Positions 1 to 58,976 are shown, counted from the first letter of the stretch. The stretch is 58,976 nt of DNA from Neoechinorhynchus agilis (GCA_051530055.1 JBMGUZ010000012.1:1-58976), one strand, 5' to 3'. Program-made: numbers and translations. The notes: generated by a model from the letters alone, not told the origin.

Positions 1-3000
1 GCCTGGGCCCATCATTTATTCCACCGAACATTTGCGGATCTCGATTTGAACGATGAGTTGTCGGTTCGTGATATTTTTGACGGAACTAAATCTAACCATA
101 CGATCAAAATAAAGCGCAACACTTCGACCCTTCTTCTTATGCGCATTCTTGTTGCTGCTCAACTCTTCAAGCTCAAACTTATTTCAGAGGAAGAACTCAT
201 GGCTGGCGGTCTTGTCTCCGGATTAGGTGTTTTCTGCCCTACATTCGAGGCTCTCACCACCCGTCAAGCTCGTATTTCGATGGTCACCAGACGGTTACTT
301 TCTAGAGCTAGAGCTATCTTAGCCACAGTCTTCCCCGATCTCATCGAATCAATAATTGGACCTCCACTCCCATCTCCTTTAACTGAAAAGAGAGCTGAAG
401 GTGAACCTGTTACTGTCTTACCTCCGGAAGATCTTAATTTAGCATCTTCTATTTTGCCCGAGAAGACGATGATTCAGCAGGACCAGCTTTCTACTATCAC
501 TCAAACTTTCGGGGCCTCCCCCACTGATCTCATAAGCAGCGCCACTCCGACACCATCTCGAGCCAAATTTCGTGCGGCTGTCGACAAGGTTCTAACAAAA
601 AAAAGAATTGAGTTCAAGGAGATTCTTTCGCAAAATCAGAAACAAGTCGAATCTACGCGAGAAGCCTTGACTAAGCGTCCTCGCGATCCTGTGTTACTTG
701 GGATTTTGGAAGAGTCTAGAACGGCTCAACTTAAAATCGACTCTAGCTTGGCTCTGATAGAAAAAGTTGCAGAAGAGTTTCAAGCGCTTTCTCACCTTGA
801 CGATCTACCAGTGATGACGACCTACAACGATGATCTCGATTTGGAGTCATTACCTAACAGCCCAGTCGACCTTGGCACCGCCTTCCTAGCTTATATGACT
901 AGGGCGAAGGCTACTGTTGGTATTGCTGAGCATGTTCGTGTAGAAAAGAGAGAAAAGCGCGAGAAATACCGTAATTACAACTCGTTTGTTCCAACCGACA
1001 AGAATGGCTCATTTACGCGTGATATGGAGGCCGCCGTGCGAAACCTCAAGTACGAGGCTGCGTTCGTCGGGGCCACGACCATCACGGAGAAAGCGGATAA
1101 TGTCGAACACAAGTTAAGGAATGACGTGCGAGTTCGGGCACATTATCTTCTCAACAAAATTGGCACTTCAAAGAAAAGACTGATGGGCCTTTGCTTCGCC
1201 CACAGAAATAATCAGCCTATGCTGCATGCTCTGGCACATGGGCTGAATTCTCGCAATCAGCGCTTGTGTGCAATATTTTGTAGAGAGCTAGATCTTCTTA
1301 ATGGACAGAGTGAATTGGTCGAAAATCTGGAATGGCGCGCCACTAGGCGCACAGCTCTACTCGCGTCTGTTAGGAACAGACATTTTAGACGGTTCAGTTC
1401 TTCAGGGTGGCTCTCACCTGATGCCATCTCCACTTTAGCTGGAAACGGAGTGAGCAGTTTTACAAGCTCATATATCTCCTCCGTCCTAGCGGGTGGCGAT
1501 GGGTATGGTGAGAGGCTCTCTGAGGAGTGGAATCGTCTGATGCACTCCATGAACGGCAATTCGATTCGTAAACCCTATGTGCCGGTAGGGTACCAGATGA
1601 CTGTCGAGTTTATACAGTCAACGGATCACGTTTCTAAAGTGGTTACCGCTTTGGCCGGTAACTATTCTCTATTTCGGACGCTGCCGGCCACTACCTTTAG
1701 CATCCTGTCTACTGCGGAACCCGCATTTCTTCATCAGATAGGTATGGCCGTACAGCAGGATGATTCTTTTCTTACTGATAAAGCTAAGAAGCTCGCAGAA
1801 GCTGATGTCTCATTCTATAAAGATAAGACCTTGGAAGAGAGGAGGGCCTTGCATTATTATTTGTGCAATATGCCCCATTTGGCCGAAACTTACGGACCAA
1901 TCTGTTTCTCGCTGGATCTTTCTTATAGTACGTCTGGTCCGATCGGCGCCGAGTATAATGAACTTTGGCGCAATGAAGAATCTGTCCTAAGACCTGGTAT
2001 GAACCTCGATCCTAAAGATTTTCATATCATATCCCCTGGCCCGACGCAACCTCCGACCACCATATCGAGCAGTTCTTGTCTCGATAGGGTGTTTAGTTTA
2101 GTTCTCTCTGACGACTTGGACACATCCGCGAGGATGGATTTTACGCGATTGTTACACACTGTTAGTCAGGTGGCTCCACTTCTTCGTCGCCGAAACGAGA
2201 AGATGGCCTATCTGACACTGTGTGGTTCCGCCGCTCTCGACCATTATCGAGACGGTTCTCCGGCTACTTTTGCTCGTCTGCGAGCTATTCTATCTACTGA
2301 TAATTACCCAGCTATTACAGCCCCACCTCCAAATGGCAATTCTCGCTTAAACGGTGACATCCGTAGGATGTGGGTCTGTCAACCATTCGAAATTGTTTGG
2401 CTACGCATGTCTATAGTAGACTTCTTCAGGTGTGTGGCCGTAAATAATCTGGTCTGGAATGAAGGACCAAATGTTCATAACTCCGCGTTTGACGGCCGTA
2501 CTCTCGCTGTCATGGAGCAATACTTTCCCGCCCCTGCAGAACAGTTGCACCGTACTGTCGCCACTGTCTGGAACCCGATCCTCACTGAAGAGATTTACAT
2601 GAATCATTCTGGGGTCGAGGATCACTATTTCTCCCTAATGGATGCATTTGCTAAGGAACCCGGTAAAATATTTATCGTGGTGTCCGTCACGTTAGAGGAG
2701 ATAGCGACTCGTGTTCAGCGATTCAGTTACACGAGTTCCAGTGGGCCGGGACCTTTTCCGTATGACAATCTTGGACTTGCTATTCTTAATGGCTCTTTTC
2801 CGAACGAACCTCTCAACGAGATTCCGTGTCAAGAGGAGTTGCTGTCTTATTTAGCCCTATCCAATAACTCCCTTGAGTATCAAGTCATGGGTAGGCTGAA
2901 TGTTCCTTACGGCTCTGGTGTCAGGATAGCCTGGAATTATGATCCAGGTTTCTATTTCTATCCCCTCATCCAACTCGGCCTTCTTAAGGTCTCTGATCTC

Positions 3001-3918
3001 CCAGCGACTCAGACTAGAATGACTCCCGAGAATGAGCTGAAGTACTATTCCGCTCAGAATATTCTACCCTGTCTGAGACTTGCCATGCACAAGTTGAGTC
3101 TTCGACTGGATACTATGCAAGTTTCAGTTAAGGCGGTCACGCCTGACTCTTCCTGGACTCTGGGGTCAATCTCTGACATATTACCAACGAGTGACAGAAC
3201 TATTCTGGGTATTATTAGTGCCTATCTAGGCGCTCCGATGGCAAGAGCTTTCGCTGCCTGGGCGAGAGACCCAGAAGTTACTATCATTCACGAAAGAACT
3301 ATCTTACATTGGGTTATGATTTCTAAAGCACTCGGAATTTCGTTTGGCTCGGGGGCTTTAGCGTATTCTGAATACAATGGTAGATCCTCTGTCGGTGTGT
3401 CGTGGCAGATGGCATCTCATACTCAAGAACCGGAGTTGACGACAAAATTCTTCCTTAACAACTCCGTTTGGTCCATCGTTCCTACTGAAGATCTAGATCC
3501 CTTTAGAATAGGGCTTAATGAAATCTGCACTCCTAATCTACTGCCTCTCATCACACTGAAAGGCTTCGTTGGTGGAGCTCGCTCCGACATCACTTTTAGA
3601 GGAGCACTGCTTCCGAGGGGTTGTAGAGGTCAATATGATGTGATCACCATCGGATCTCTTTTTGCAATTCAAGTGAAAATTAATGCTCTTACGCGCCTCC
3701 GTTTTTCGCTAGCTCACATGGCAAGTTGGGAAACTCGCTTCGATAAAGGTACATTCGATGTTCCTAGAAATGAGCGCTACACCGACCCTCTCGACATTGC
3801 TTCTTGTTTCGAGGGGGACTCGTTGTTAGCACCCATGGGCCTCGAGGTCCCAACTTCTTCCAGAAAAAAGAAGACAGAGGATGCTTCAGAGCGTCCGGAT
3901 GCCTCTGCGGAGGATTGA
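1..3918 (+). CDS. Large virus-like ORF1 (>=1305 aa, open to the window edge); probable capsid/Gag polyprotein of a totivirus-like dsRNA virus, endogenised
   Basis: Frame 1 has no stop from base 1 (AWAHHLFHRTFADLDLNDELS...) to TGA at 3916-3918. It is intronless, visibly GC-richer than the flanking host DNA, and overlaps a -1-frame ORF2. A diverged paralog at 42586-45547 differs mostly at synonymous sites, so the frame is genuinely coding. The capsid identity is inferred from architecture, not from a recognised motif. Confidence 0.6.
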   Translation, partial: AWAHHLFHRTFADLDLNDELSVRDIFDGTKSNHTIKIKRNTSTLLLMRILVAAQLFKLKLISEEELMAGGLVSGLGVFCPTFEALTTRQARISMVTRRLLSRARAILATVFPDLIESIIGPPLPSPLTEKRAEGEPVTVLPPEDLNLASSILPEKTMIQQDQLSTITQTFGASPTDLISSATPTPSRAKFRAAVDKVLTKKRIEFKEILSQNQKQVESTREALTKRPRDPVLLGILEESRTAQLKIDSSLALIEKVAEEFQALSHLDDLPVMTTYNDDLDLESLPNSPVDLGTAFLAYMTRAKATVGIAEHVRVEKREKREKYRNYNSFVPTDKNGSFTRDMEAAVRNLKYEAAFVGATTITEKADNVEHKLRNDVRVRAHYLLNKIGTSKKRLMGLCFAHRNNQPMLHALAHGLNSRNQRLCAIFCRELDLLNGQSELVENLEWRATRRTALLASVRNRHFRRFSSSGWLSPDAISTLAGNGVSSFTSSYISSVLAGGDGYGERLSEEWNRLMHSMNGNSIRKPYVPVGYQMTVEFIQSTDHVSKVVTALAGNYSLFRTLPATTFSILSTAEPAFLHQIGMAVQQDDSFLTDKAKKLAEADVSFYKDKTLEERRALHYYLCNMPHLAETYGPICFSLDLSYSTSGPIGAEYNELWRNEESVLRPGMNLDPKDFHIISPGPTQPPTTISSSSCLDRVFSLVLSDDLDTSARMDFTRLLHTVSQVAPLLRRRNEKMAYLTLCGSAALDHYRDGSPATFARLRAILSTDNYPAITAPPPNGNSRLNGDIRRMWVCQPFEIVWLRMSIVDFFRCVAVNNLVWNEGPNVHNSAFDGRTLAVMEQYFPAPAEQLHRTVATVWNPILTEEIYMNHSGVEDHYFSLMDAFAKEPGKIFIVVSVTLEEIATRVQRFSYTSSSGPGPFPYDNLGLAILNGSFPNEPLNEIPCQEELLSYLALSNNSLEYQVMGRLNVPYGSGVRIAWNYDPGFYFYPLIQLGLLKVSDLPATQTRMTPENELKYYSAQNILPCLRLAMHKLSLRLDTMQVSVKAVTPDSSWTLGSISDILPTSDRTILGIISAYLGAPMARAFAAWARDPEVTIIHERTILHWVMISKALGISFGSGALAYSEYNGRSSVGVSWQMASHTQEPELTTKFFLNNSVWSIVPTEDLDPFRIGLNEICTPNLLPLITLKGFVGGARSDITFRGALLPRGCRGQYDVITIGSLFAIQVKINALTRLRFSLAHMASWETRFDKGTFDVPRNERYTDPLDIASCFEGDSLLAPMGLEVPTSSRKKKTEDASERPDASAED

Positions 3919-5072
3919 TCACTGAACGCTTTAGTTCAGAATGTCGGTCTGAGCTTAGCAACCAACTTGCAGGGAAGATGAGTCATTACTACAATCCGCG
4001 CCCTGTGAGAGTCTTTGCTAAGGCTCGCCAGAGAATATTGGCTGAACGTTGGGACTTCGTCCCTATTCATACAGGCGACATTCCTCGCGATATTCTATCA
4101 AAAATTGAAAATTATCTTAAAGTATGGAATCTCTCGGCGTCCGTTAGACAACTGTACTCGTTCCTTCTTCCATACTATCGGCTTAAGCAATTCGAATATT
4201 CTGATGTTTGGCTCCTTGACTCTTCAGGTGCTCCCTCAGCTCTAAACAATTTATGCTGGCACATTGAGTGCCCGATATGCAATATGGTCTCGATAAAGCA
4301 TGAAAGACGTGATATAGTCATTGAACTAGGTCGAGACTATTACGAAGCCAAGGTTGAAATTGCGAGTTGGGAGAACATCATTGCTGCTAAAAAATTATCT
4401 GAGCGAGAATTCTTCTCATCACTACGACCTTTAACTGCAGAGATTGAAGCAGAGGGGATGCCGCGAACTGCTTGGGTTGAGAGGGAGGCTGATTGTTCTA
4501 TTCGATACATCCCTCCCCCGACCAAAGTTTCCGAAAAGGTAGCATCTCTGTTTCCTGGTTCTGCCGCTTGGCAACGTTCATGTGCTCTAGTAAGCCGCTT
4601 AGGGCTCGATTCTCTGCTAGAACATATCTATCGATCCTTGAATCTGATTCCTACATTTGAAGGCTCATTGTTATGGATGCGCCGTGTCTCTGCTTTCGCT
4701 AAAGCCAACATAACCTCCACCCGTTACGCTACTATGCTGGTTGATCTTAACAGGTGGCTCGGTCACTTTCCGCTCCTCAGTGAAGGAGAGATGATTCAAT
4801 CAGCGCGAGAGTGGTTAGGTCGAATGAATTCATGTTTGGGCTCGGGCGGAGCTTTAATCTGGGAGAGACTTAATCTCTTACATGCTTCTGAACTTATTTC
4901 GAAAATCTTTTCCTCGATTCCAAAACAGACCGGAGCTGATATATGGCGCGAAATGCTCATTAGCCGTACATGGTCAACGCCAGGAGCATCGAACGCTGGG
5001 AATTATTCAGCCAGAAGAAATCAGCTAGGCGACGAGGAAAGTGATGGAGATGAGAGCAGAGTGTTGCGCTAA
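3804..5072 (+). CDS. ORF2 in the -1 frame; N-terminal portion of a toti-like RdRp, truncated before the catalytic motifs
   Basis: The -1 frame is open from 3774. LVDLNRWLGH...EWL, followed ~80 aa later by RTWSTPGAS, resembles the LVE..L.GR pre-motif and the W...G[SA] motif 1 of Ghabrivirales RdRps. No SG..T/GDD motifs follow. Substitutions against the paralog are synonymous in this frame from ~3840. Confidence 0.5.
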   Translation: MFRGGLVVSTHGPRGPNFFQKKEDRGCFRASGCLCGGLITERFSSECRSELSNQLAGKMSHYYNPRPVRVFAKARQRILAERWDFVPIHTGDIPRDILSKIENYLKVWNLSASVRQLYSFLLPYYRLKQFEYSDVWLLDSSGAPSALNNLCWHIECPICNMVSIKHERRDIVIELGRDYYEAKVEIASWENIIAAKKLSEREFFSSLRPLTAEIEAEGMPRTAWVEREADCSIRYIPPPTKVSEKVASLFPGSAAWQRSCALVSRLGLDSLLEHIYRSLNLIPTFEGSLLWMRRVSAFAKANITSTRYATMLVDLNRWLGHFPLLSEGEMIQSAREWLGRMNSCLGSGGALIWERLNLLHASELISKIFSSIPKQTGADIWREMLISRTWSTPGASNAGNYSARRNQLGDEESDGDESRVLR

Positions 5073-6161: not shown

Positions 6162-6194
6162 GAAGGGAGAAAACCGTGTGGTTATCACCGGAAA
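5400..6194 (+). repeat. 42-bp direct repeat (5400-5441 and 6153-6194) marking the 3' end of the virus-like cassette
   Basis: agggactaagaagggagaaaaccg(a/t)gtggttatcaccggaaa occurs twice; AT-rich DNA starts right after the second copy. Confidence 0.9.
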
Positions 6195-6348
6195 AGTGCT
6201 TGTGGGTATCATACTTATTTTTATGGACCGGTATAATTCAAACCTTCATAGCTTTATCCTTCAAACTTTGGTCTTTTCATCAAGTTCAGCCTCATTCGTC
6301 ACTGTTCTTTAAAAATTAATTTTTTCATTATTTGTAAACATGTACAGA

Positions 6349-8148: not shown

Positions 8149-8387
8149 AAAAATATACATTTGCTTGCAGGACAATCGAAAAGAAGTAACCAAACGACAT
8201 TTGAGCCTTTTGCGTCGCGGAAAAAATCAGGTCTGTATTCTATTTTTAGAACTAACACAATGGCGCCTGAGTGTTTTTTGTAAATCATTGCACTAACAAT
8301 CTAAAAGGCAACAATAGCAGAACACACGAGACGCAGAATTATGATCAACAAATCTATTGAAAAATATCTATTCTACGAAGTATAATC

Positions 8388-13500: not shown

Positions 13501-13507
13501 GCGTCTA

Positions 13508-15875: not shown

Positions 15876-15914
15876 TGATACAATCTTCGCTATTGAAACA
15901 AAAAAGTTCCAATA

Positions 15915-40032: not shown

Positions 40033-42374
40033 TCTTGATGATTGATAGATATCGTAGACTATTTTTGAGGATTATAAGATCGTTTCGCTTTACTTGGTCG
40101 TTTTTGAAAAGGTTATCTCGGATTGCAAATAAGCAAACATGACGCAAATATTGATTTTGGACTCACAAATATTGAAAGAGTATTGTTATTTGGATATTAA
40201 GCGTTGAGCCACATGAAAGGCTTTCTATTATCATTGCTTTGACTTAGTTTAAGGAAACAGCAAATTTTTGGATTTAAGACTTTAACAAAAATTAAGCCCG
40301 CATTTTCCAATGAGGACGATGTCTCTGGCCGAATTCGATGATAACGAGCAATTCTTTAGATTTTATTCGGATAACAAATCACTTAAAAAACGCGTATCAT
40401 TTGAATAACACGAATTCAGGTTTTGAAAGGCCTTAAAGATCTCATTTGTTAGACCCAGCGAATGTATAGCGCCCAGTAGCTTTGCTGAACAAAGAATCAG
40501 ACGAATCTTAGGACTTATCATCCCGGGTAATCGTGATAGCCACAATCAACTCACAAAAAGGAGGATGATCGCCTACTGGCAAGGATTTATGAACTTGTTG
40601 CGGAATCTAGGCAGCTAAATTTTCTTTAACAGGAAAACCAACTTATTTTAGACTCTTTTAAACCTTTTGTAATGCCAACAAATGTAAAAGTGGCCAGCGA
40701 ACGATCAGTGATTGTAATGCCGACACTAAGTTCATCGATAAGCGACGTATTGAAATTAAAAAAAGAAGCTCCTTCGAAGGGAAGATCAATTGAAAGGATT
40801 TAAATAGACTTGTCGAATACATGGAAGAGTGGTCGAAAATCCATCACAGAAGGTAACCGTAAGCCGTCTTTGAAAGGAAAGAGATCCCCGGCGCATTTGG
40901 TTGGGCGTTAATTCCTGTGCTTTTCGATAAAGTTGGATATTCTAACATCAAGACTCTATTTGTCCTCTAAATCTATAGAATGCTTTAATCGATGTCTTAT
41001 TAATGATTTTGATTTAATCGCATCCTTATCTTTGCAGCAGTTCGATCTTTTAGTGAAGAATTCAACCTCGAACACATGACGGTCTCTAAGTCTGCTCATT
41101 TTTGTTTCTAATTCCTATAAACGATTCAATAAGGATAAAATCCAACGGCAAATTGGAATCTTCGTAAGGGCGACCACTTCTCCGATGGGTTCTGGAGGGT
41201 GATTACGAACAAGAAACCGTATCTTCTTCTAATGTGGCAGCCGGCTAACGAAGCCGTGGAATAAATTTCTTATCAAGTTCTGTGAATTTCTATTAAAACC
41301 TTTCCCTTTTATTAGAATGTCGCATGTTCATTACAATAAAATTCGGTAGCACGTTCATTCGAAAGCAACGCTTGAGGACGATTTCAGCATCTCCTGATTC
41401 TCAGTGTATTTGATCATTTCGAAGAAAATCGGCTTGCTCAATTGAATTTTGATCAGTCGGTGGATTGTCCACTGATTTCTAAACCGCTTGTTATCTTTTT
41501 CGAATTTATCCAAATTAAGCAACTGAAAACAAATGCGGCTACAAAATACTAATTAAATAGCCCGTGAGATTTTTAGGTTTAAAGGAAATTTCAGTTCAAT
41601 TCTTCCTTTGGGAGCATCGAGTCCAGTTAGACAAAATGCGAACATCGAATAAATAAAATGACTTTATATTTGAATTCCCGTCACTTAAACGCAATGGGTT
41701 TTTAGCGTTTCAATTTTTAGGCCATGAATCGATATTTCTGATTGAAAAATAACGATTTTTTTATCGATTCTAAATTTTTATTCGAAGAAGCTTAAAACTG
41801 TCCGTCGGTACAATAATAAACATTTTCTATTCAGCACTTTAGAAAACCCAATAAAATCGCTTTAAACCTAAGACTTTGAGCAAGCAAACAAAATGACTAC
41901 TTTTCCCGAATTGATTTATCGATAAAAAGTCGACTAAAAATTTTAAATGTGCGCCGAATAATAAAACGGACCCGAATTCTGTCGTTTTTTCGTAACTTCC
42001 AAAACGCCGTCCGCTTTCTAAAGCGCTGCACCCGCATTCCTCGCGTCGTTCTGTTTTGTTCTCCGGTGAATCGAGCGACTTTGGCGATGGTGGAAAATCG
42101 TTTACGTTCGTACCGAGGACGAATGGAAGCGTCTCAATGCAAGTGAGTAATATTTTGAAATTGTGGGAAATCTCTGTTTTTCCTTTGAAATAATGTTGAA
42201 TTTTCGTATTTCCAACGACAGCAGTATGCAAACCATGTAACAAGTTGTAGAGCTCGAAAGTTGATGGGACGAACTCATTGGCGACTTTAAGTGTCGGGCG
42301 GGCCATTCTGAAAATGTCAAATGCAGTAAGGAGCGTATATTGAGGAGCAACCTTAAAATGGGCGGATTTGGCCG

Positions 42375-42700
42375 ATTTCCAGCAATGATGTGCATCCAAC
42401 TATCGATTTCGACTTTAGATTCAGAGTAATCTCTACCCAACTCGATGACAATATCTTGTCTCTCATGTCTAATCGAAATCATGTTGCAGACCGGGCATTC
42501 CACATGCCAGCACAGGTTATTCAGAGCTGAAGGTGTACCAGATGCATCAGCTCAGATTCACATTCCGAACTAAATCGTTCGGTGGCTAATCCTCCGCAGA
42601 GGCAGCCGCACGCTCTGAAGCATCCTCTATCTTCGACCCTTTGGAAGAAATTCGGGCCTCGGGGCCCATGGGTGCTAACTGCGAGTCCCCCTCGAAACAC
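42375..42700 (-). pseudogene. Internally deleted fragment of the ORF2 paralog
   Basis: The -1 frame reads VFRGGLAVSTHGPRGPNFFQRVEDRGCFRACGCLCGGLATERFSSECESEL, then a ~270-nt deletion, then SGTPSALNNLCWHVECPVCNMISIRHERQDIVIELGRDY; homologous to 3804-4390. Confidence 0.85.
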
Positions 42701-45547
42701 GAGGCAATACCGAGAGGATCGGTATACCTTTCGTTCCTGGGGACATCGAAGGTGCCCTTGTCAAAGCGAGTGTCCCAACTCGCTAGATGCGCCAGAGAGA
42801 AGCGGAGACGGATATGAGCGTTAATTTTAACTTGGATCGCGAAGAGAGAACCTATAGTAATCACGTCGTACTGACCTTTGCATCCTCTAGGAAGGAGCGC
42901 CCCTCTGAAAGTGATATCAGAACGGATTCCGCCGATGAAACCTTTCAATGTGACGAGAGGCATTAGTTCGGGCGTGCAAGGTTCATTAAGTCCGATTCTG
43001 AATGGATCAAGGTCGTCGGTACAAACGACAGACCATACCGAATTGTTTAAGAAGAATTTAGTCGTCAGCTCAGCCTCCTGAGTATGAGAAGACAGTTGCC
43101 ACGACACTCCAACAGAAGACCTACCATTATGTTCGGAATACGCCATGGCCCCGGAACCGAACGATACTCCAAGTGACTTGGAGACCATGACCCAGTGTAG
43201 AATTGTTCGTTCATGAACGATAGTGACTTCCGGATCAACCGCCCATGCAGCAAAAGCTCTAGCTAGCGGAACGCCCAAATATGCGTTAATGATACCCAAA
43301 ATAGTCCTATCGCTCGTTGGTAGCACATCGGAAATCGACCCTAAAATCCAAGAAGATTCAGGCGTCACTGCTTTGATCGAAACTTGCATCGTGTCAAGCC
43401 GCAGACTTAACTTGTGTGCAGCAAGCCTAAGGCACGGCAAGATGTCAGGTGCAGAATAATACTTCAACTCGTTTTCAGGAGTCAACCTTGTTCGAGTAGC
43501 CGGAAGATCTGAGACCTTAAGAAGGCCAAACTGAATAAGAGGGTAAAAGTAGAAGCCCGGGTCGTAATTCCAGGCTAGTCTAATACCAGAATTGTACGGA
43601 ACCTTTAGCCTACCCATAAATTGGTAGTCAAGAGTATTGTTGGATAAGGCTAAGTAAGATAATAATTCCTCTTGACATGGAATTTCATTTAAAGCCTCAT
43701 TCGGAAACGAACCGTTGAGGATCGAGAGGCCGAGATTGTCGTAAGGGAAAGAACCCATTCCGTTGGAACTAGTATAGCGGAATCGCTGGACACAAGTCGC
43801 AATCTCTTCTAACGTGACGGTTACCACAATAAAAATCTTATTGGCTTGTTTAGCGAACGCATCCATCAGAGAAAAGAAATGCTCCTCGGTGCCAGAACGA
43901 TTCATATAGATCTCATCAACAAGAATCGGATTCCACACAGTAGCGACTATACGATGCAACTGCTCCGCGGGAGCCGGGAAATATTGTTCCATGACGGCGA
44001 GGGTACGACCGTCAAGTGCCGAGTTGTGGACATTTGGTCCTTCGTTCCAGACTAAATTGTTAACGGCTACGCATCTGAAGAAGTCAACGACGGACATGCG
44101 CAGCCAGACGATCTCAAACGGTTGACATACCCACATACGGCGAATATTACCATTCAAGCGAGAATTACCGTTTGGCGGCGGAGCCGTAACTGTCGGATAA
44201 TTGTCAGTAGAAAGAATTGCTCGCATTCGAGCGAACGTGGCTGGGGAGCCGTCTCGATAATGATCGAGCGCAGCAGAACCGCAAAGCGTCAGGTAAGCCA
44301 TTTTTTCGTTCCGACGACGGAGCAGTGGGGCAACCTGACTAACGGTATGTAAAAGCCGAGTGAAATCCATCCGTGCGGATGTATCCAAATCATCTGATAG
44401 AATTAAGCTATACACTCTATCGAGACAAGAGCTGCTCGAAATAGTGGTCGGAGGGTCAACCGGATCGGGTGAGAGAATGTGGAACACATTAGGGTCTAGG
44501 TCCATGCCGGGTTTCAACATGAGCTCTTGCTCACGCCATAGTTCGTTATATTCGGCACCAATTGGACCAGACATAGCATAAGATAAGCCCAAAGAGATAC
44601 AAATCGGTTCGTGAGTTTCAGTCAGATGGGGCATGTTGCAGAGATAGTAATGTAGAGCTCTCTTTTCCTCGACGCTCTTGCCTCTGTAGAAGGGTACGCT
44701 AGCCTCAGCAACTGCCCTGGCTTTATCGTTAAGAAAGCTATCGTCCTGCTCGAGGATCAGGCCTGCGTCATGGAGAAATTCGGGCTCTTTGGTAGCAATG
44801 ATGCTAAAGTTGGTGGCGGGGATGGTCCGAAACAAGGAATAATTACCAGCCAGAGCGGTAACTATTTTGGAGACATGGTCGGCCGACTGAACGAATTCAA
44901 CTGTCATTTGATATCCTACCGGCACATAGGGTCGCGGAATCGAATTGCCGTTGAGAGAGTGCATGAGGCGATTCCATTCCTCGGAAAGTCTTTCAGCATA
45001 ACCATCGCCACCAGCCAGGACGGAGGAGATATAGGAGCTAGTGAAACTGCTCACCCCGTTTCCGGCTAAAGTGGAGATGGCATCAGGTGAAAGCCACCCC
45101 GAAGAACTGAATTGCCTGAAGTGCCTATTTCTAAGCGATGCAAGCAAAGCTGTGCGCCTAGTGGCGCGCCATTCCAGACTTTCCAACAATTCGCTTTGCC
45201 CATTTAGAACATCTAACTCCCTACAAAAGGCTGCGCACAAGCGCTGGTTACGGGAGGCCAGCCCATGCGCTAGAGCATGTAACATGGGCTGATTGTTCCT
45301 ATGAGCAAAGCAGAGACCCATTAATCTCTTCTTTGATATTCCGATTTTATTAAGAAGGTGATGCGCGCGAACTCGCACATCATTACGAATCTTATGTTCG
45401 ATATTGTCCGACTTTTCCGCGATGGTTGTAGCCCCGACGAACGCAGCCTCATACTTGAGGTTTCGTACGGCAGCCTCCATGTCACGGGTGAAAGAACCGT
45501 TCTTATCTGTAGGGACGAATGAATTGTAATTACGATACCTATCGCGC
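42586..45547 (-). CDS. Diverged, 5'-truncated paralog of virus-like ORF1 (~985 aa uninterrupted)
   Basis: Colinear with ORF1 from R.RYRNYNSFVPTDKNGSFTRDM to ...ASAED*. About 80-85% aa identity by eye with saturated synonymous differences. The 5' end is fused to the 121-bp array. Confidence 0.85.
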
Positions 45548-52794: not shown

Positions 52795-55180
52795 TTAGTC
52801 CCTTATCATTTTCGAAAAGACTGAGGTCCTATTGTAGAGCAAAGCTACATAGTTCCCTATTGCCTTCTCCCAGACTACTGGGTTCCGGTGTCTTATGAAT
52901 TCAAAGTCTTCTCCGACTGTGGATTCGATTTTGCCCAAGCAAGAGTTTATCCTACTTGTAACAGCTTGTTCCCAAGCAGTCATTGGACCGTTTAGGAGTT
53001 TTGGCCTCATCAAAGCTAATCTCTTCACCTCTTCTCTTTCTTTTCACAGAGGGAGCGAATTACTGCAGTTACAAGTGTCCTGGTGACTATCGCCACCTAG
53101 GATCGGCGAGATCAGAAGAATTAAATCGTTCTTCCAGTTTCGTAATCCTCCACCAGTTTCTTGACTGGGCAAAAGGAATGTCCCACTTCTTTTCAGAGGC
53201 AATCCCTGCGAGTAAGTGGACCATAAACCCTAAGGCCATCTTAGCTGGACCTTCTGGTTTTTAACCTGCGGCGGTTGGAACTGCCACCAGCAAGTCGATT
53301 AGAGCGGCTAAGTTTGATACCGCTTCTAATTCTTTTGTTCGGCCCGGGACACTTAATGCGTCCGAGGCTTCTTCTCGAGTGAGTGGGTTTTCATCCCACA
53401 CAGTCTTAAAAGACAATTCACTATTTGTGAATTATCTGCAATTAGTTCGCACCCTGCAATCAGGGATGCTCCTAATAAGTTGTGGTAGAATCTAGGAAAT
53501 TCTGCCTCCAAGTTTCCGGTGATAACCACACGGTTTTATCCCTTCTTAGTCCCTTTAAATCTTATACTCTTATAGAGACTGTCAAGCGCCATCCATCTTT
53601 GGACGTTGCCATCAAGATCGTCGTAGTCGGCTAATTCGACCCACGGCGGTCCATCAATGTCACCGGGTTCAATCGCGGCGACATTAGACGCGGTCCGCGA
53701 ACTCCCACCTGGAGTCGAAGACCTATCTCTACCTGCCCTATTTGGGACAGGCGTTGACGCAACACTCCTGCCAGTGTTGGCATTTGTGTTAACTGGGGCA
53801 GATGACCCATACAGGGGCCACCTCGCCGAACTTGAATTATCGGGTTCTCTCCCGGTCATTCTGTCTGTGCTCTTTATTGCCTTAGCGCAACACTCTGCTC
53901 TCATCTCCATCACTTTCCTCGTCGCTAGCTGATTTCTTCTGGCTGAATAATTCCCAGCGTTCGATGCTCCTGGCGTTGACCATGTACGGCTAATGAGCAT
54001 TTCGCGCCATATATCAGCTCCGGTCTGTTTTGGAATCGAGGAAAAGATTTTCGAAATAAGTTCAGAAGCATGTAAGAGATTAAGTCTCTCCCAGATTAAA
54101 GCTCCGCCCGAGCCCAAACATGAATTCATTCGACCTAACCACTCTCGCGCTGATTGAATCATCTCTCCTTCACTGAGGAGCGGAAAGTGACCGAGCCACC
54201 TGTTAAGATCAACCAGCATAGTAGCGTAACGGGTGGAGGTTATGTTGGCTTTAGCGAAAGCAGAGACACGGCGCATCCATAACAATGAGCCTTCAAATGT
54301 AGGAATCAGATTCAAGGATCGATAGATATGTTCTAGCAGAGAATCGAGCCCTAAGCGGCTTACTAGAGCACATGAACGTTGCCAAGCGGCAGAACCAGGA
54401 AACAGAGATGCTACCTTTTCGGAAACTTTGGTCGGGGGAGGGATGTATCGAATAGAACAATCAGCCTCCCTCTCAACCCAAGCAGTTCGCGGCATCCCCT
54501 CTGCTTCAATCTCTGCAGTTAAAGGTCGTAGTGATGAGAAGAATTCTCGCTCAGATAATTTTTTAGCAGCAATGATGTTCTCCCAACTCGCAATTTCAAC
54601 CTTGGCTTCGTAATAGTCTCGACCTAGTTCAATGACTATATCACGTCTTTCATGCTTTATCGAGACCATATTGCATATCGGGCACTCAATGTGCCAGCAT
54701 AAATTGTTTAGAGCTGAGGGAGCACCTGAAGAGTCAAGGAGCCAATGAGGGAGCACCTGAAGAGTCAAGGAGCCAAACATCAGAATATTCGAATTGCTTA
54801 AGCCGATAGTATGGAAGAAGGAACGAGTACAGTTGTCTAACGGACGCCGAGAGATTCCATACTTTAAGATAATTTTCAATTTTTGATAGAATATCGCGAG
54901 GAATGTCGCCTGTATGAATAGGGACGAAGTCCCAACGTTCAGCCAATATTCTCTGGCGAGCCTTAGCAAAGACTCTCACAGGGCGCGGATTGTAGTAATG
55001 ACTCATCTTCCCTGCAAGTTGGTTGCTAAGCTCAGACCGACATTCTGAACTAAAGCGTTCAGTGATCAATCCTCCGCAGAGGCATCCGGACGCTCTGAAG
55101 CATCCTCTGTCTTCTTTTTTCTGGAAGAAGTTGGGACCTCGAGGCCCATGGGTGCTAACAACGAGTCCCCCTCGAAACAA
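52795..55180 (-). pseudogene. Right-arm copy of ORF2/ORF3, frameshifted by a 31-nt duplication; ORF2 and ORF3 are in frame with each other here
   Basis: Duplication at 54715-54776. A 1-nt difference (ctagcgacg vs ctaggcgacg) fuses ...RRNQL to ATRKVMEMR.... Confidence 0.8.
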
Positions 55181-58100
55181 GAAGCAATGTCGAGAGGGTC
55201 GGTGTAGCGCTCATTTCTAGGAACATCGAATGTACCTTTATCGAAGCGAGTTTCCCAACTTGCCATGTGAGCTAGCGAAAAACGGAGGCGCGTAAGAGCA
55301 TTAATTTTCACTTGAATTGCAAAAAGAGATCCGATGGTGATCACATCATATTGACCTCTACAACCCCTCGGAAGCAGTGCTCCTCTAAAAGTGATGTCGG
55401 AGCGAGCTCCACCAACGAAGCCTTTCAGTGTGATGAGAGGCAGTAGATTAGGAGTGCAGATTTCATTAAGCCCTATTCTAAAGGGATCTAGATCTTCAGT
55501 AGGAACGATGGACCAAACGGAGTTGTTAAGGAAGAATTTTGTCGTCAACTCCGGTTCTTGAGTATGAGATGCCATCTGCCACGACACACCGACAGAGGAT
55601 CTACCATTGTATTCAGAATACGCTAAAGCCCCCGAGCCAAACGAAATTCCGAGTGCTTTAGAAATCATAACCCAATGTAAGATAGTTCTTTCGTGAATGA
55701 TAGTAACTTCTGGGTCTCTCGCCCAGGCAGCGAAAGCTCTTGCCATCGGAGCGCCTAGATAGGCACTAATAATACCCAGAATAGTTCTGTCACTCGTTGG
55801 TAATATGTCAGAGATTGACCCCAGAGTCCAGGAAGAGTCAGGCGTGACCGCCTTAACTGAAACTTGCATAGTATCCAGTCGAAGACTCAACTTGTGCATG
55901 GCAAGTCTCAGACAGGGTAGAATATTCTGAGCGGAATAGTACTTCAGCTCATTCTCGGGAGTCATTCTAGTCTGAGTCGCTGGGAGATCAGAGACCTTAA
56001 GAAGGCCGAGTTGGATGAGGGGATAGAAATAGAAACCTGGATCATAATTCCAGGCTATCCTGACACCAGAGCCGTAAGGAACATTCAGCCTACCCATGAC
56101 TTGATACTCAAGGGAGTTATTGGATAGGGCTAAATAAGACAGCAACTCCTCTTGACACGGAATCTCGTTGAGAGGTTCGTTCGGAAAAGAGCCATTAAGA
56201 ATAGCAAGTCCAAGATTGTCATACGGAAAAGGTCCCGGCCCACTGGAACTCGTGTAACTGAATCGCTGAACACGAGTCGCTATCTCCTCTAACGTGACGG
56301 ACACCACGATAAATATTTTACCGGGTTCCTTAGCAAATGCATCCATTAGGGAGAAATAGTGATCCTCGACCCCAGAATGATTCATGTAAATCTCTTCAGT
56401 GAGGATCGGGTTCCAGACAGTGGCGACAGTACGGTGCAACTGTTCTGCAGGGGCGGGAAAGTATTGCTCCATGACAGCGAGAGTACGGCCGTCAAACGCG
56501 GAGTTATGAACATTTGGTCCTTCATTCCAGACCAGATTATTTACGGCCACACACCTGAAGAAGTCTACTATAGACATGCGTAGCCAAACAATTTCGAATG
56601 GTTGACAGACCCACATCCTACGGATGTCACCGTTTAAGCGAGAATTGCCATTTGGAGGTGGGGCTGTAATAGCTGGGTAATTATCAGTAGATAGAATAGC
56701 TCGCAGACGAGCAAAAGTAGCCGGAGAACCGTCTCGATAATGGTCGAGAGCGGCGGAACCACACAGTGTCAGATAGGCCATCTTCTCGTTTCGGCGACGA
56801 AGAAGTGGAGCCACCTGACTAACAGTGTGTAACAATCGCGTAAAATCCATCCTCGCGGATGTGTCCAAGTCGTCAGAGAGAACTAAACTAAACACCCTAT
56901 CGAGACAAGAACTGCTCGATATGGTGGTCGGAGGTTGCGTCGGGCCAGGGGATATGATATGAAAATCTTTAGGATCGAGGTTCATACCAGGTCTTAGGAC
57001 AGATTCTTCATTGCGCCAAAGTTCATTATACTCGGCGCCGATCGGACCAGACGTACTATAAGAAAGATCCAGCGAGAAACAGATTGGTCCGTAAGTTTCG
57101 GCCAAATGGGGCATATTGCACAAATAATAATGCAAGGCCCTCCTCTCTTCCAAGGTCTTATCTTTATAGAATGAGACATCAGCTTCTGCGAGCTTCTTAG
57201 CTTTATCAGTAAGAAAAGAATCATCCTGCTGTACGGCCATACCTATCTGATGAAGAAATGCGGGTTCCGCAGTAGACAGGATGCTAAAGGTAGTGGCCGG
57301 CAGCGTCCGAAATAGAGAATAGTTACCGGCCAAAGCGGTAACCACTTTAGAAACGTGATCCGTTGACTGTATAAACTCGACAGTCATCTGGTACCCTACC
57401 GGCACATAGGGTTTACGAATCGAATTGCCGTTCATGGAGTGCATCAGACGATTCCACTCCTCAGAGAGCCTCTCACCATACCCATCGCCACCCGCTAGGA
57501 CGGAGGAGATATATGAGCTTGTAAAACTGCTCACTCCGTTTCCAGCTAAAGTGGAGATGGCATCAGGTGAGAGCCACCCTGAAGAACTGAACCGTCTAAA
57601 ATGTCTGTTCCTAACAGACGCGAGTAGAGCTGTGCGCCTAGTGGCGCGCCATTCCAGATTTTCGACCAATTCACTCTGTCCATTAAGAAGATCTAGCTCT
57701 CTACAAAATATTGCACACAAGCGCTGATTGCGAGAATTCAGCCCATGTGCCAGAGCATGCAGCATAGGCTGATTATTTCTGTGGGCGAAGCAAAGGCCCA
57801 TCAGTCTTTTCTTTGAAGTGCCAATTTTGTTGAGAAGATAATGTGCCCGAACTCGCACGTCATTCCTTAACTTGTGTTCGACATTATCCGCTTTCTCCGT
57901 GATGGTCGTGGCCCCGACGAACGCAGCCTCGTACTTGAGGTTTCGCACGGCGGCCTCCATATCACGCGTAAATGAGCCATTCTTGTCGGTTGGAACAAAC
58001 GAGTTGTAATTACGGTATTTCTCGCGCTTTTCTCTCTTTTCTACACGAACATGCTCAGCAATACCAACAGTAGCCTTCGCCCTAGTCATATAAGCTAGGA

Positions 58101-58976
58101 AGGCGGTGCCAAGGTCGACTGGGCTGTTAGGTAATGACTCCAAATCGAGATCATCGTTGTAGGTCGTCATCACTGGTAGATCGTCAAGGTGAGAAAGCGC
58201 TTGAAACTCTTCTGCAACTTTTTCTATCAGAGCCAAGCTAGAGTCGATTTTAAGTTGAGCCGTTCTAGACTCTTCCAAAATCCCAAGTAACACAGGATCG
58301 CGAGGACGCTTAGTCAAGGCTTCTCGCGTAGATTCGACTTGTTTCTGATTTTGCGAAAGAATCTCCTTGAACTCAATTCTTTTTTTTGTTAGAACCTTGT
58401 CGACAGCCGCACGAAATTTGGCTCGAGATGGTGTCGGAGTGGCGCTGCTTATGAGATCAGTGGGGGAGGCCCCGAAAGTTTGAGTGATAGTAGAAAGCTG
58501 GTCCTGCTGAATCATCGTCTTCTCGGGCAAAATAGAAGATGCTAAATTAAGATCTTCCGGAGGTAAGACAGTAACAGGTTCACCTTCAGCTCTCTTTTCA
58601 GTTAAAGGAGATGGGAGTGGAGGTCCAATTATTGATTCGATGAGATCGGGGAAGACTGTGGCTAAGATAGCTCTAGCTCTAGAAAGTAACCGTCTGGTGA
58701 CCATCGAAATACGAGCTTGACGGGTGGTGAGAGCCTCGAATGTAGGGCAGAAAACACCTAATCCGGAGACAAGACCGCCAGCCATGAGTTCTTCCTCTGA
58801 AATAAGTTTGAGCTTGAAGAGTTGAGCAGCAACAAGAATGCGCATAAGAAGAAGGGTCGAAGTGTTGCGCTTTATTTTGATCGTATGGTTAGATTTAGTT
58901 CCGTCAAAAATATCACGAACCGACAACTCATCGTTCAAATCGAGATCCGCAAATGTTCGGTGGAATAAATGATGGG
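55066..58976 (-). CDS. Right-arm copy of virus-like ORF1, protein identical to the left copy, open to the window edge
   Basis: The ORF track shows identical 1290-aa translations. Confidence 0.6.
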   Translation of the reverse strand, partial: HHLFHRTFADLDLNDELSVRDIFDGTKSNHTIKIKRNTSTLLLMRILVAAQLFKLKLISEEELMAGGLVSGLGVFCPTFEALTTRQARISMVTRRLLSRARAILATVFPDLIESIIGPPLPSPLTEKRAEGEPVTVLPPEDLNLASSILPEKTMIQQDQLSTITQTFGASPTDLISSATPTPSRAKFRAAVDKVLTKKRIEFKEILSQNQKQVESTREALTKRPRDPVLLGILEESRTAQLKIDSSLALIEKVAEEFQALSHLDDLPVMTTYNDDLDLESLPNSPVDLGTAFLAYMTRAKATVGIAEHVRVEKREKREKYRNYNSFVPTDKNGSFTRDMEAAVRNLKYEAAFVGATTITEKADNVEHKLRNDVRVRAHYLLNKIGTSKKRLMGLCFAHRNNQPMLHALAHGLNSRNQRLCAIFCRELDLLNGQSELVENLEWRATRRTALLASVRNRHFRRFSSSGWLSPDAISTLAGNGVSSFTSSYISSVLAGGDGYGERLSEEWNRLMHSMNGNSIRKPYVPVGYQMTVEFIQSTDHVSKVVTALAGNYSLFRTLPATTFSILSTAEPAFLHQIGMAVQQDDSFLTDKAKKLAEADVSFYKDKTLEERRALHYYLCNMPHLAETYGPICFSLDLSYSTSGPIGAEYNELWRNEESVLRPGMNLDPKDFHIISPGPTQPPTTISSSSCLDRVFSLVLSDDLDTSARMDFTRLLHTVSQVAPLLRRRNEKMAYLTLCGSAALDHYRDGSPATFARLRAILSTDNYPAITAPPPNGNSRLNGDIRRMWVCQPFEIVWLRMSIVDFFRCVAVNNLVWNEGPNVHNSAFDGRTLAVMEQYFPAPAEQLHRTVATVWNPILTEEIYMNHSGVEDHYFSLMDAFAKEPGKIFIVVSVTLEEIATRVQRFSYTSSSGPGPFPYDNLGLAILNGSFPNEPLNEIPCQEELLSYLALSNNSLEYQVMGRLNVPYGSGVRIAWNYDPGFYFYPLIQLGLLKVSDLPATQTRMTPENELKYYSAQNILPCLRLAMHKLSLRLDTMQVSVKAVTPDSSWTLGSISDILPTSDRTILGIISAYLGAPMARAFAAWARDPEVTIIHERTILHWVMISKALGISFGSGALAYSEYNGRSSVGVSWQMASHTQEPELTTKFFLNNSVWSIVPTEDLDPFRIGLNEICTPNLLPLITLKGFVGGARSDITFRGALLPRGCRGQYDVITIGSLFAIQVKINALTRLRFSLAHMASWETRFDKGTFDVPRNERYTDPLDIASCFEGDSLLAPMGLEVPTSSRKKKTEDASERPDASAED

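What the first reader, a model, noticed from the sequence alone, without database searches (positions are those of the whole stretch)
3774..3960. Substitution pattern reveals a hidden frame switch (gag-pol-type recoding) upstream of the ORF1 stop
Aligning this region with the paralog (42553-42730, minus strand): up to 3804 the differences are at third positions of the ORF1 frame (gag/gaa, tac/tat, gct/gcc, tct/tcg). From ~3840 they become third-position synonymous changes in the -1 frame (cct/ccc, ggt/ggc, ccc/ccg, aac/aat, cag/caa, gac/gat, gga/ggc, ttg/tta, act/acc, cgc/cga, tca/tcg, ctt/ctg), and those inside the overlap are amino-acid-changing in ORF1. The -1 peptide GPRGPNFFQ..EDRGCFRA.GCLCGGL.TERFSSEC.SEL is conserved well upstream of the first ATG (3979). 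ORF2 translation must therefore begin inside the nearly invariant window 3805-3841 (TGTTTCGAGGGGGACTCG..GTTAGCACCCATGGGCC) or at its edge. That window has no canonical X XXY YYZ heptamer. Candidates are a non-canonical slip at (U/G)_UGU_UUC or G_GGG_GAC, or a near-cognate start (TTG here, GTG in the paralog, both at the 3804 position).
Basis: partly seen in the sequence, partly recalled or inferred. Interest (0 to 1): 0.8.

Follow-up and report, generated by a model that had tools for sequence, protein, structure and literature searches.

The report
Fossil toti-like virus frame switch
The hidden change of reading frame is real: it is the junction between the large upstream gene and the polymerase gene of a totivirus-like RNA virus, copies of which are fossilised in the genome of the fish-parasitic worm Neoechinorhynchus agilis.

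Summary
Copy A (window 1-5072, +) and paralog B (42372-45547, -) align without gaps over 2999 nt at 76% identity. Up to 3804, 504 of 685 differences fall on ORF1 third positions. From 3842 on, 14 of 22 fall on third positions of the -1 frame (Fisher p = 2e-11). The stretch 3805-3841 has only two differences, and it holds the longest run invariant in three lineages across 2.9 kb.

The host is the acanthocephalan N. agilis. ORF2 matches the N-terminal third of ~960-aa proteins that carry Pfam RdRP_4. These are named 'Molussus totiviridae 1' and 'Triaenono virus 1'. The window copy stops before the polymerase core, so this is an endogenous viral element, not a working gene pair.

ORF2-frame entry lies between 3786 and 3842. 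I could not fix the mechanism:
- No X_XXY_YYZ heptamer is shared by all copies.
- Copy B has G_GGC_CCC, the Trichomonas-virus -1 heptamer, at 3837-3843.
- All copies share U_UUC and G_GGG_GAC.
- L001 has ATG at the 3804 position.
- I found no significant downstream RNA structure.

This is a new member of a known kind, of moderate interest. I left out fetching exogenous relatives and further copies.

The parts
1..3918 (+). ORF1 of copy A. It is open from the first base of the window (at least 1305 codons) to the stop at 3916-3918. By its position it is the presumed capsid-type ('gag'-like) gene of the virus-derived element.
   Evidence: no stops in 1-3915. Relatives were found only in N. agilis. 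pS 0.758 and pN 0.082 against copy B. No Pfam or PDB match.
3774..5072 (+). ORF2 remnant of copy A, in the -1 frame relative to ORF1. It is the N-terminal part of an RdRp and a broken gene: one 3' truncation, with the polymerase core absent.
   Evidence: HMMER hits to ~960-aa proteins that carry RdRP_4. P0012 residues 55-358 match window 4077-4994. No match in the window to the RdRp core part found in L001.
3786..3842 (+). Interval within which the ORF2 frame must be entered. Its 5' limit is the last ORF2-frame stop in any of the three lineages. Its 3' limit is the first ORF2-synonymous, ORF1-changing substitution.
3805..3841 (+). Near-invariant window. It consists of a 17-nt block (3805-3821) and a 10-nt block (3827-3836) that are identical in A, B and L001, separated by 5 variable bases. 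It holds the shared partial slip sites U_UUC (3807-3810) and G_GGG_GAC (3813-3819). The NTG codon at 3804 abuts it.
3837..3843 (+). Position of a formal -1 heptamer in copy B (G_GGC_CCC). Copy A differs from it at one base. L001 has a different formal heptamer three bases downstream.
   Evidence: The heptamer is the one reported for Trichomonas vaginalis virus 2/5 (PMC8953718).
3880..3916 (+). Candidate hairpin of 12 pairs that ends at the ORF1 stop. It is paired in all three lineages, with 2 compensatory pairs, but this is not significant.
   Evidence: 100% of cells paired against 39-58% for slid controls; 58 of 500 shuffles reach the observed value. (z -0.9 to -1.7 for the 45-nt pieces).
42586..45547 (-). 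ORF1 remnant of paralog B. It is a broken gene (one 5' truncation) and is open throughout the homologous part.
42372..42760 (-). ORF2 remnant of paralog B. It is a broken gene: one internal deletion and one 3' truncation.
42663..42699 (-). Counterpart in copy B of the near-invariant window.
55066..58976 (-). ORF1 of copy A', the mirror image of copy A in the palindromic window. It is identical to A.
   Evidence: (I1, 100% complementary).
53882..55210 (-). ORF2 remnant of copy A'. It is a broken gene: the same 3' truncation as A, plus one indel relative to A whose length is not a multiple of three.
55143..55179 (-). Counterpart in copy A' of the near-invariant window.

Best explanation
The window carries three copies (A, its mirror A', and the diverged B) of an endogenous viral element. 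The element derives from a monosegmented, totivirus-like RNA virus of the acanthocephalan Neoechinorhynchus agilis.

ORF1 is the virus's large upstream (capsid-position) gene. ORF2 is the start of its RNA-dependent RNA polymerase, lying in the -1 frame and overlapping the last ~110 nt of ORF1.

The switch in substitution pattern marks the place where, in the ancestral virus, ribosomes left the ORF1 frame for the polymerase frame. Most likely this was -1 ribosomal frameshifting giving an ORF1-RdRp fusion, as in most Totiviridae. The site lies between 3786 and 3842.

Shown:
- The frame switch and its statistics.
- The RdRp kinship of ORF2.
- The host-genome location.
- The truncation of ORF2 before the polymerase core.
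- The exceptional nucleotide conservation of 3805-3841.

Inferred:
- ORF1 is a capsid gene.
- The selection seen between copies acted in the virus, before separate integrations.
- Entry into ORF2 is by slippage. The site would be U_UUC or G_GGG_GAC inside the invariant block, or the G_GGC_CCC-type site at its 3' edge.

In the worm's DNA today the signal is a fossil, because no copy in the window can make a polymerase.
For: Host and copy family:
- ORF1 relatives are only N. agilis hypothetical proteins, at 53-85% identity.
- Copies lie on 19-Mb and other chromosomes.

Viral kinship:
- HMMER of ORF2 against 1.84 billion proteins finds P0012, P0014 and P0015 (955-963 aa; contigs of 7487 and 8089 nt). 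The match covers their residues ~47-360.
- These three carry Pfam RdRP_4 and RdRP_1 at ~400-650.
- Named relatives are 'Triaenono virus 1' and the RdRp of 'Molussus totiviridae 1'.

Collinearity:
- P0012 residues 55-358 match window 4077-4994, and residues 295-885 match L001 downstream of its ORF1 homolog.
- That L001 ORF carries the C-terminal part of RdRP_4.

Frame switch:
- Phase counts, pS/pN and Fisher p = 2e-11.
- The same -1 relation holds in L001.

Conservation of the ORF2-frame peptide upstream of the first ATG:
- A against L001: 19 of 37 identical, E = 2e-12 for the pair.
- P0010, from another chromosome: 0, 5 and 9 of 2000 shuffles reach its score against L001, A and B.

Nucleotide constraint at the junction.

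Known biology: most toti and toti-like viruses make the RdRp as a fusion by -1 frameshifting, sometimes at non-canonical or unidentified sites (PMC8229945; PMC8953718; PMC5009743).
Against: - No X_XXY_YYZ heptamer is shared by the three lineages between 3742 and 3915. The formal heptamers present are copy-specific and lie at different places.
- No stable structure follows any candidate site. The 122-nt folds have z-scores of +0.6 to +0.7. The one hairpin kept in all copies lies 36-70 nt downstream and is not significant.
- ORF1 has no detectable similarity to any capsid: Pfam and PDB are blank, and the AlphaFold model is unusable at pLDDT 29.5.
- L001 has an ATG exactly at the 3804 position, and P0010's annotated Met aligns two codons further on. 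Both fit an independent start.
- Only three lineages cover the junction.
- After 3842, L001 does not favour the ORF2 frame clearly: 9 of 24 residues identical to A, against 6 of 24 in the ORF1 frame and 9 of 24 in the third frame.
Confidence: 0.6

Rival explanations
1. The origin is the same virus, but the polymerase frame is entered by independent initiation. The start would be the NTG codon at 3804 (AUG in some lineages, near-cognate UUG or GUG in others), giving a separate RdRp rather than a fusion protein.
For: - The codon at 3804 is TTG in A, GTG in B and ATG in L001, always in the ORF2 frame and exactly at the 5' edge of the invariant block.
- P0010's annotated Met aligns to the 3810 position.
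- The invariance of 3805-3841 is simply explained if both frames are translated from 3804 on.
- No canonical slip site or stimulatory structure is shared by the copies.
- Some Totiviridae, such as victoriviruses, make a separate RdRp (PMC8229945).
Against: - The first base of that codon varies (T, G, A), as expected for an unconstrained ORF1 third position and not for a start codon. UUG and GUG are weak starts in eukaryotes (established knowledge).
- The site lies ~3.8 kb inside ORF1, behind many AUGs, so it would need an internal entry mechanism. Rfam finds nothing that could provide one.
- Known separate expression in the family is stop-restart at the ORF1 stop. Here the conserved ORF2 peptide starts ~110 nt before that stop.
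- P0010's Met is a gene-caller's choice and may be arbitrary.
Confidence: 0.2
2. The copies are host genes, either domesticated virus genes or a host gene family. The purifying selection seen between A and B would then act in the worm, with ORF2-frame translation (by whatever route) serving the host.
For: - ORF1 is open over its whole homologous length in A, A', B and L001: at least 1305, 964 and 1266 codons.
- pN/pS is about 0.11.
- NCBI annotates the ORFs as genes.
Against: - The polymerase gene is truncated or otherwise broken in every copy examined, each in a different way. This is the pattern of independent decaying insertions.
- Copies differ in their ends and flanks.
- An RVT_1 ORF and a noda-like fragment sit next to copies, as in clusters of integrated virus fragments.
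- Selection on a 5' fragment of an RdRp without its catalytic core is hard to justify.
Confidence: 0.1
3. The frame change is not biological. A one-base assembly error in a homopolymer (the G5 or A6 run) would split one continuous ORF. Alternatively, a short intron would join the two frames.
For: - Long-read assemblies make homopolymer errors.
- The window is an odd palindromic contig.
- The host is a eukaryote with introns.
Against: - Three lineages at 76% and about 54% identity show the same -1 relation in a gapless alignment.
- All keep an ORF1 stop ~75-80 nt after the switch. A and B use different stop codons at the same position.
- The two frames overlap with dual conservation, rather than abutting at a splice-like boundary.
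- Relatives are RNA-virus polymerases.
Confidence: 0.04

Closest known systems
Totiviridae and 'toti-like' viruses of animals: capsid-RdRp expression by -1 programmed ribosomal frameshifting (for example Trichomonas vaginalis viruses 2-5 and the piscine and arthropod toti-like viruses)
   Same: - A 5' long ORF is followed by an RdRp ORF in the -1 frame, overlapping the end of ORF1.
- The RdRp relatives carry Pfam RdRP_4 and are named Totiviridae by depositors.
- Relatives sit on contigs of 7.5-8.1 kb, within the size range of toti-like genomes.
- Copy B has the very heptamer reported for TVV2 and TVV5 (PMC8953718).
- Sequence around the shift is strongly conserved and is followed by a less conserved stretch, as described for TVV.
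   Different: - ORF1 (about 1270-1305 aa) matches no known capsid.
- No heptamer is shared by all lineages, and no pseudoknot or hairpin sits at the usual 5-9 nt spacing.
- The overlap is long (~110 nt).
- The sequence here is DNA in a host chromosome and lacks the polymerase core.
Endogenous viral elements from non-retroviral RNA viruses (totivirus-like insertions in eukaryotic nuclear genomes). That such insertions are widespread is established knowledge of mine, not tested here.
   Same: - Virus-derived ORFs lie in host chromosomes, in several diverged and variously truncated copies.
- They sit next to a reverse-transcriptase ORF and to fragments of another RNA virus.
   Different: - ORF1 copies are unusually long and intact.
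- The ORF1/ORF2 junction is preserved well enough to read the frame switch from substitutions.
- The N. agilis genome paper (PMC12690905) mentions viruses only in its reference list.
Retroviral and retrotransposon gag-pol -1 frameshifting
   Same: The logic is the same: a structural gene is followed by a polymerase gene in the -1 frame without its own AUG, and a minority of ribosomes makes the fusion.
   Different: The polymerase is an RdRp, not a reverse transcriptase. There are no LTRs and no protease or integrase, and ORF1 and ORF2 give no RVT hit.
Planarian toti-like viruses with the proposed +1 slip at UUU_C (bioRxiv 10.1101/551184), and the lumpfish toti-like virus CLuTLV with the proposed GGAUUUC site (PMC8229945)
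   Same: These are toti-like viruses of invertebrates or fish in which the shift site is short and non-canonical and rests on a Phe codon. Here a U_UUC is invariant in all copies.
   Different: In planarian viruses ORF2 is in the +1 frame and the motif is read UUU_C. Here ORF2 is in the -1 frame and the ORF1-frame codon is UUC preceded by U. None of these sites has been tested experimentally.

Membership tests
Toti-like virus (Totiviridae sensu lato) derived element | The polymerase is homologous to totivirid RdRps (Pfam RdRP_4). | tested here: met
   Window ORF2 itself gives no Pfam hit. It does match residues ~47-360 of P0012, P0014 and P0015, with E values from 8e-17 to 4e-4. These carry RdRP_4 and RdRP_1 further on and are related to the RdRp of 'Molussus totiviridae 1'. 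The L001 copy carries the C-terminal RdRP_4 part, E = 2e-10. So the feature is met through relatives; the window copy lacks the catalytic core.
Toti-like virus (Totiviridae sensu lato) derived element | There are two long ORFs, with the 5' ORF followed by an RdRp ORF that overlaps its end in another frame. | tested here: met
   The same arrangement is seen in L001.
Toti-like virus (Totiviridae sensu lato) derived element | ORF1 encodes a capsid protein with the totivirus-type fold. | tested here: inconclusive
   Pfam gave 0 hits. PDB searches with the sequence and with a profile gave 0 hits. The AlphaFold2 model built on a 5-sequence alignment has pLDDT 29.5, so I ran no fold search.
Toti-like virus (Totiviridae sensu lato) derived element | The genome is a single dsRNA segment of roughly 4.6-8 kb. 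| not testable with these tools
Relatives lie on contigs of 7487 and 8089 nt. ORF1 (~3.9 kb) plus an RdRp of ~2.9 kb would fit that size.
Canonical -1 programmed ribosomal frameshift signal | There is an X_XXY_YYZ slippery heptamer in the upstream frame, conserved among relatives. | tested here: not met
   The scan of 3742-3915 in A, B and L001 found formal heptamers only at copy-specific places: A at 3864, B at 3837, and L001 at the equivalents of 3786 and 3840. Only partial sites are shared: N_UGU_UUC, U_UUC_GAG and G_GGG_GAC.
Canonical -1 programmed ribosomal frameshift signal | There is a stimulatory hairpin or pseudoknot 5-9 nt downstream of the slip site. | tested here: inconclusive
   Minimum-free-energy folds are no more stable than shuffles, with z of +0.6 to +0.7. 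The alifold hairpins next to the block have no covariation or are broken in L001. The conserved hairpin at 3880-3916 is too far away and not significant. Pseudoknots were not searched.
Canonical -1 programmed ribosomal frameshift signal | The downstream ORF is in the -1 frame, lacks its own start, and is conserved upstream of its first AUG. | tested here: met
   This is met in A and B, where the first ATG is at 3978 and the ORF2-frame peptide is conserved from at least 3842. L001 has an ATG at the 3804 position.
Canonical -1 programmed ribosomal frameshift signal | A transframe protein product exists. | not testable with these tools
   No expression or peptide data were available. No sequence joining the two frames was built.
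Endogenous viral element (integrated non-retroviral RNA virus fragment) | The virus-derived sequence is embedded in host chromosomal DNA. | tested here: met
   The window also holds an mRNA-capping-enzyme ORF and repeat-rich host-like genes. Copies lie on 7.8-19 Mb N. agilis chromosomes.
Endogenous viral element (integrated non-retroviral RNA virus fragment) | The viral gene set is incomplete or disrupted. | tested here: met
   - A: ORF2 has 1 truncation.
- A': the same truncation plus 1 frame-breaking indel.
- B: ORF1 has 1 truncation; ORF2 has 1 deletion and 1 truncation.
- L001: ORF2 has 1 internal loss and 1 tandem amplification.
- L002: lacks the junction.

The most novel reading that the evidence does not exclude
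The 17-nt and 10-nt blocks at 3805-3836 are invariant across lineages whose ORF1 proteins are only 54% identical, and they are not accompanied by any shared canonical heptamer or nearby structure. They could be a previously undescribed recoding signal of a new clade of toti-like viruses of Syndermata. The signal would either be a non-canonical -1 slip on U_UUC or G_GGG_GAC programmed by flanking primary sequence, or an internal entry site that starts the polymerase at an AUG or near-cognate codon deep inside ORF1. A side possibility is that the repeatedly intact ORF1 copies of more than 1200 codons are kept by the worm for a use of its own.
Probability: 0.25. Interest if true: 0.6.

Novelty: new member of a known kind. 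Interest (0 to 1): 0.4.

Why it matters
The result shows that substitution phase alone can expose a viral polymerase junction in unannotated animal DNA. NCBI annotates the two ORFs as unrelated hypothetical proteins.

It also documents a family of totivirus-like insertions in an acanthocephalan. The published genome paper for this species does not discuss viruses. Several diverged lineages are present, which implies a long association between this parasite lineage and such viruses.

For recoding specialists it offers a junction with very strong nucleotide conservation but no shared canonical signal. This adds to the toti-like cases (CLuTLV, BGTLV-1, the planarian viruses) in which the shift site is unclear.

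It has no bearing on harm. Every copy examined lacks a complete polymerase gene.

Tried and rejected
Searches and tests that led nowhere:
- Pfam on ORF1, ORF2 and the small ORFs downstream: nothing.
- PDB sequence and profile searches for both proteins: nothing.
- Rfam and tRNA scans of the window: nothing.
- Word-based protein search with ORF2: only the window's own protein. This justified the one full HMMER search.
- AlphaFold2 of ORF1 residues 334-1305 with 5 sequences: pLDDT 29.5. I ran no fold search, because matches to such a model are meaningless.
- RNA folding of the junction in three lineages: no excess stability.
- Alifold hairpins adjacent to the block: invariant or broken.
- Literature searches for 'Triaenono virus' and 'Molussus totiviridae': no papers.
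- The L002 copy does not contain the junction.

Readings I rejected:
- The A_AAA_AAG heptamer of copy A at 3864-3870, which has a 9-nt spacer to the 3880-3916 hairpin. It is absent from B and L001, and five ORF2-synonymous changes lie upstream of it.
- The ATG at 3835, which is in the ORF1 frame.
- Stop-restart at the ORF1 stop, because the conserved ORF2 peptide begins ~75-110 nt earlier.

- Searches were run before or just as the viral nature became clear. They printed the bounds of aligned pieces in broken copies, from which break places can be read. My early working also noted such bounds. I carried none of them into notes or into this report, and later scripts printed only counts and outer bounds.
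- fetched two host-genome loci before any tool had likened the element to a virus. After that I made no further look-ups.


Full report
**1. What is in the window.**
The 58,976-nt window is close to a palindrome. Arms 8-7386 and 51570-58976 are 99-100% complementary, and further arm pairs extend inward.
- ORF1 runs from the first base of the window to a stop at 3916-3918, with no stop in 1-3915.
- A second ORF in the -1 frame opens at 3774 and ends at 5072. Its first ATG is at 3978.
- The mirror copy A' lies at 53882-58976 on the minus strand.
- A diverged paralog B lies at 42372-45547 on the minus strand.
- The window has no tRNA and no Rfam family.

**2. Check of the observation.**
A 957-3955 and B 45547-42549 align without a single gap at 76.4% identity.

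Differences by codon phase:

| Stretch | ORF1 3rd position | ORF1 1st position | ORF1 2nd (= ORF2 3rd) |
|---|---|---|---|
| 957-3804 | 504 | 125 | 56 |
| 3842-3955 | 3 | 5 | 14 |

The stretch 3805-3841 has 2 adjacent differences in all. Fisher's test on the phase switch gives p = 2.2e-11.

Substitution proportions:

| Stretch and frame | pS | pN |
|---|---|---|
| ORF1, 957-3804 | 0.758 | 0.082 |
| 3842-3915, ORF1 frame | 0.057 | 0.202 |
| 3842-3915, ORF2 frame | 0.474 | 0.080 |

- The ORF1 stop is kept at the same position in A and B, though as two different stop codons.
- A second aligned block deeper in ORF2 keeps the ORF2-frame pattern, with 29 of 44 differences at ORF2 third positions.

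**3. The invariant window.**
- All 12 ORF1 third positions in 3805-3841 are unchanged between A and B, against a background change rate of 0.53. However, a run of 12 unchanged third positions and a 31-nt identical run occur elsewhere too.
- The third lineage decides the matter. In L001 (54% protein identity in ORF1), 10 of those 12 positions are identical in all three copies, against 186 of 932 upstream.
- The 17-nt run at 3805-3821 is the longest three-way invariant run in ~2.9 kb. The 37-nt window starting at 3805 has the highest three-way count in the gene: 31, against a mean of 19.1 and sd of 4.3.
- The 17-mer occurs exactly three times in the window (A, A', B) and once in L001.

**4. What the genes are.**
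- ORF1 has relatives only among hypothetical proteins of Neoechinorhynchus agilis (assembly GCA_051530055.1), at 53-85% identity.
- Pfam and PDB give nothing for ORF1 or ORF2.
- The word search with ORF2 found only the window's own product, so I used the single full HMMER search.
- Besides N. agilis fragments (P0008-P0011), it found three proteins of 955-963 aa (P0012, P0014, P0015). Their residues ~47-360 match ORF2 residues ~83-400.
- These three carry Pfam RdRP_4 and RdRP_1 at ~400-650.
- P0012 and P0014 lie on contigs of 7487 and 8089 nt; no contig is listed for P0015. One of the three is 'Triaenono virus 1', and their relatives are annotated as the RdRp of 'Molussus totiviridae 1'.
- Collinearity holds. 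P0012 residues 55-358 match window 4077-4994, and residues 295-885 match the L001 locus downstream of its ORF1 homolog. The ORF there carries the C-terminal part of RdRP_4.
- The window has no counterpart of that part. In the protein alignment, ORF2 ends just before the conserved polymerase motifs.
- ORF2 is therefore the N-terminal ~40% of a totivirus-like RdRp. ORF1 occupies the capsid position, which I infer from position only: the AlphaFold2 model was unusable at pLDDT 29.5, so I ran no fold search.

**5. State of the copies.** Counts only:
- A: ORF1 is open and cut by the contig end. ORF2 has one 3' truncation.
- A': as A, plus one indel in ORF2 whose length is not a multiple of three.
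- B: ORF1 has one 5' truncation. ORF2 has one internal deletion and one truncation.
- L001: ORF1 is intact at 1266 codons. ORF2 has one internal loss and one tandem amplification of an internal segment.
- L002: lacks the junction.

The breaks differ from copy to copy, while the A-B divergence is dominated by synonymous change. An RVT_1 ORF and a noda-like fragment lie next to copies. The simplest reading is several recent, separate integrations of diverged strains of one virus clade. On that reading, the selection recorded in the substitutions acted in the virus.

**6. Where and how the frame is entered.**
The ORF2 frame is closed by stops until 3774 in A and, in A coordinates, 3744 in B and 3786 in L001. 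The first substitution that is silent in ORF2 and changes ORF1 is at 3842. If the site is homologous in the three lineages, it lies in 3786-3842.

Evidence that the ORF2 frame is coding upstream of the first ATG:
- A against L001 in the ORF2 frame gives 19 of 37 identical residues.
- The N-terminus of P0010, a far more diverged copy on another chromosome, aligns gaplessly with it. Of 2000 shuffles, 0, 5 and 9 reach the observed score against L001, A and B. A short Gly/Phe/Arg/Cys-rich motif is shared.

Candidate sites:
- (a) U_UUC at 3807-3810, and (b) G_GGG_GAC at 3813-3819. Both are invariant in all copies. If either is used, dual coding explains the invariance of the block.
- (c) The 3' edge. 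B has G_GGC_CCC at 3837-3843, the heptamer reported for Trichomonas vaginalis viruses 2 and 5 (PMC8953718). A differs from it at one base, and L001 has a different formal heptamer three bases further on. If (c) is used, the block upstream needs another explanation.
- (d) Initiation at the codon at 3804, which is TTG in A, GTG in B and ATG in L001. P0010's annotated Met aligns two codons downstream.

RNA structure:
- No structure follows any of these sites at the usual distance. The 122-nt folds are no more stable than shuffles.
- A 12-pair hairpin at 3880-3916, ending at the ORF1 stop, is fully paired in all three lineages with two compensatory pairs. It is not significant with three sequences and lies 36-70 nt away.

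I rank slippage giving a fusion protein first. That is the rule in the family (PMC8229945; PMC5009743), and a weak, variable NTG 3.8 kb inside an ORF is an unlikely start. The sequence alone cannot decide.

**7. Comparison with what is known.**
- The arrangement is that of Totiviridae and the toti-like viruses of animals.
- Toti-like viruses with non-canonical or unidentified shift sites are on record: GGAUUUC proposed in CLuTLV, no site found in BGTLV-1 (PMC8229945), and a +1 UUU_C in planarian viruses (bioRxiv 10.1101/551184).
- Integrated fragments of totivirus-like viruses in eukaryotic genomes are a known phenomenon (my own knowledge).
- The N. agilis genome and transcriptome paper mentions viruses only in its reference list (PMC12690905).
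- This is a new member of a known kind. The open point of some interest is the strongly conserved junction that lacks a shared canonical signal.

Noticed in passing
window 1-58976: The whole contig is nearly a palindrome, with arm pairs at 99-100% complementarity from both ends inward to about 17.5 kb and 38 kb. The right arm holds about 7.6 kb of extra sequence that includes copy B. This may be a real inverted duplication or a fold-back assembly artefact.
   Followed up: partly
L001, between the ORF1 homolog and the RdRP_4 ORF (within 10001-19930): There is a tandem array of a 238-nt unit, 18.8 copies at 95% matches. Its unit is homologous to the part of the polymerase gene that encodes ORF2 residues ~344-424 of the window copy. 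In other words, it is a satellite-like array grown from a viral gene fragment.
   Followed up: partly
L002 13106-16539 and L001 19881-20984: Next to the toti-like copies lie a called gene with nodavirus methyltransferase and RdRP_3 (weak) domains, and an ORF with a reverse-transcriptase (RVT_1) domain. Fragments of unrelated RNA viruses and retroelements therefore cluster together.
   Followed up: no
window 37780-40032 (-) and 16802-17539 (+): An uninterrupted 750-codon ORF encodes a complete metazoan-type mRNA capping enzyme: a dual-specificity phosphatase domain plus the guanylyltransferase catalytic and C-terminal domains. A partial copy lies in the other arm. An intronless capping-enzyme gene beside virus-derived DNA is unexplained.
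   Followed up: no
window 8278-11137, 29892-33693, 50303-50737: Long arrays of a 135-nt (45-codon) coding tandem repeat make acidic, Ser/Glu/Asp-rich ORFs of up to 659 aa. These ORFs give a Pfam SH3BGR hit, E = 1e-16.
   Followed up: no
window 45427-46815: A 121-nt tandem array of about 11 copies begins right at the 5' end of copy B. Weaker copies lie at 51287-51707.
   Followed up: no
window 6349-6857 and 41677-42166: A ~500-nt repeat (95% identical) lies downstream of both copy A and copy B, at different distances. The virus-derived parts are only 76% identical, so this is a younger dispersed repeat or a shared insertion context.
   Followed up: partly
window 3864-3870 and 3880-3916: Copy A alone has a textbook A_AAA_AAG heptamer 9 nt upstream of the conserved hairpin. 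It is absent from B and L001 and lies downstream of the frame switch, so it is probably coincidental.
   Followed up: yes
window 12401-13491: There is a tandem repeat with a period of 239-242 nt, 4-5 copies. It is unrelated to ORF2 by tblastn.
   Followed up: no
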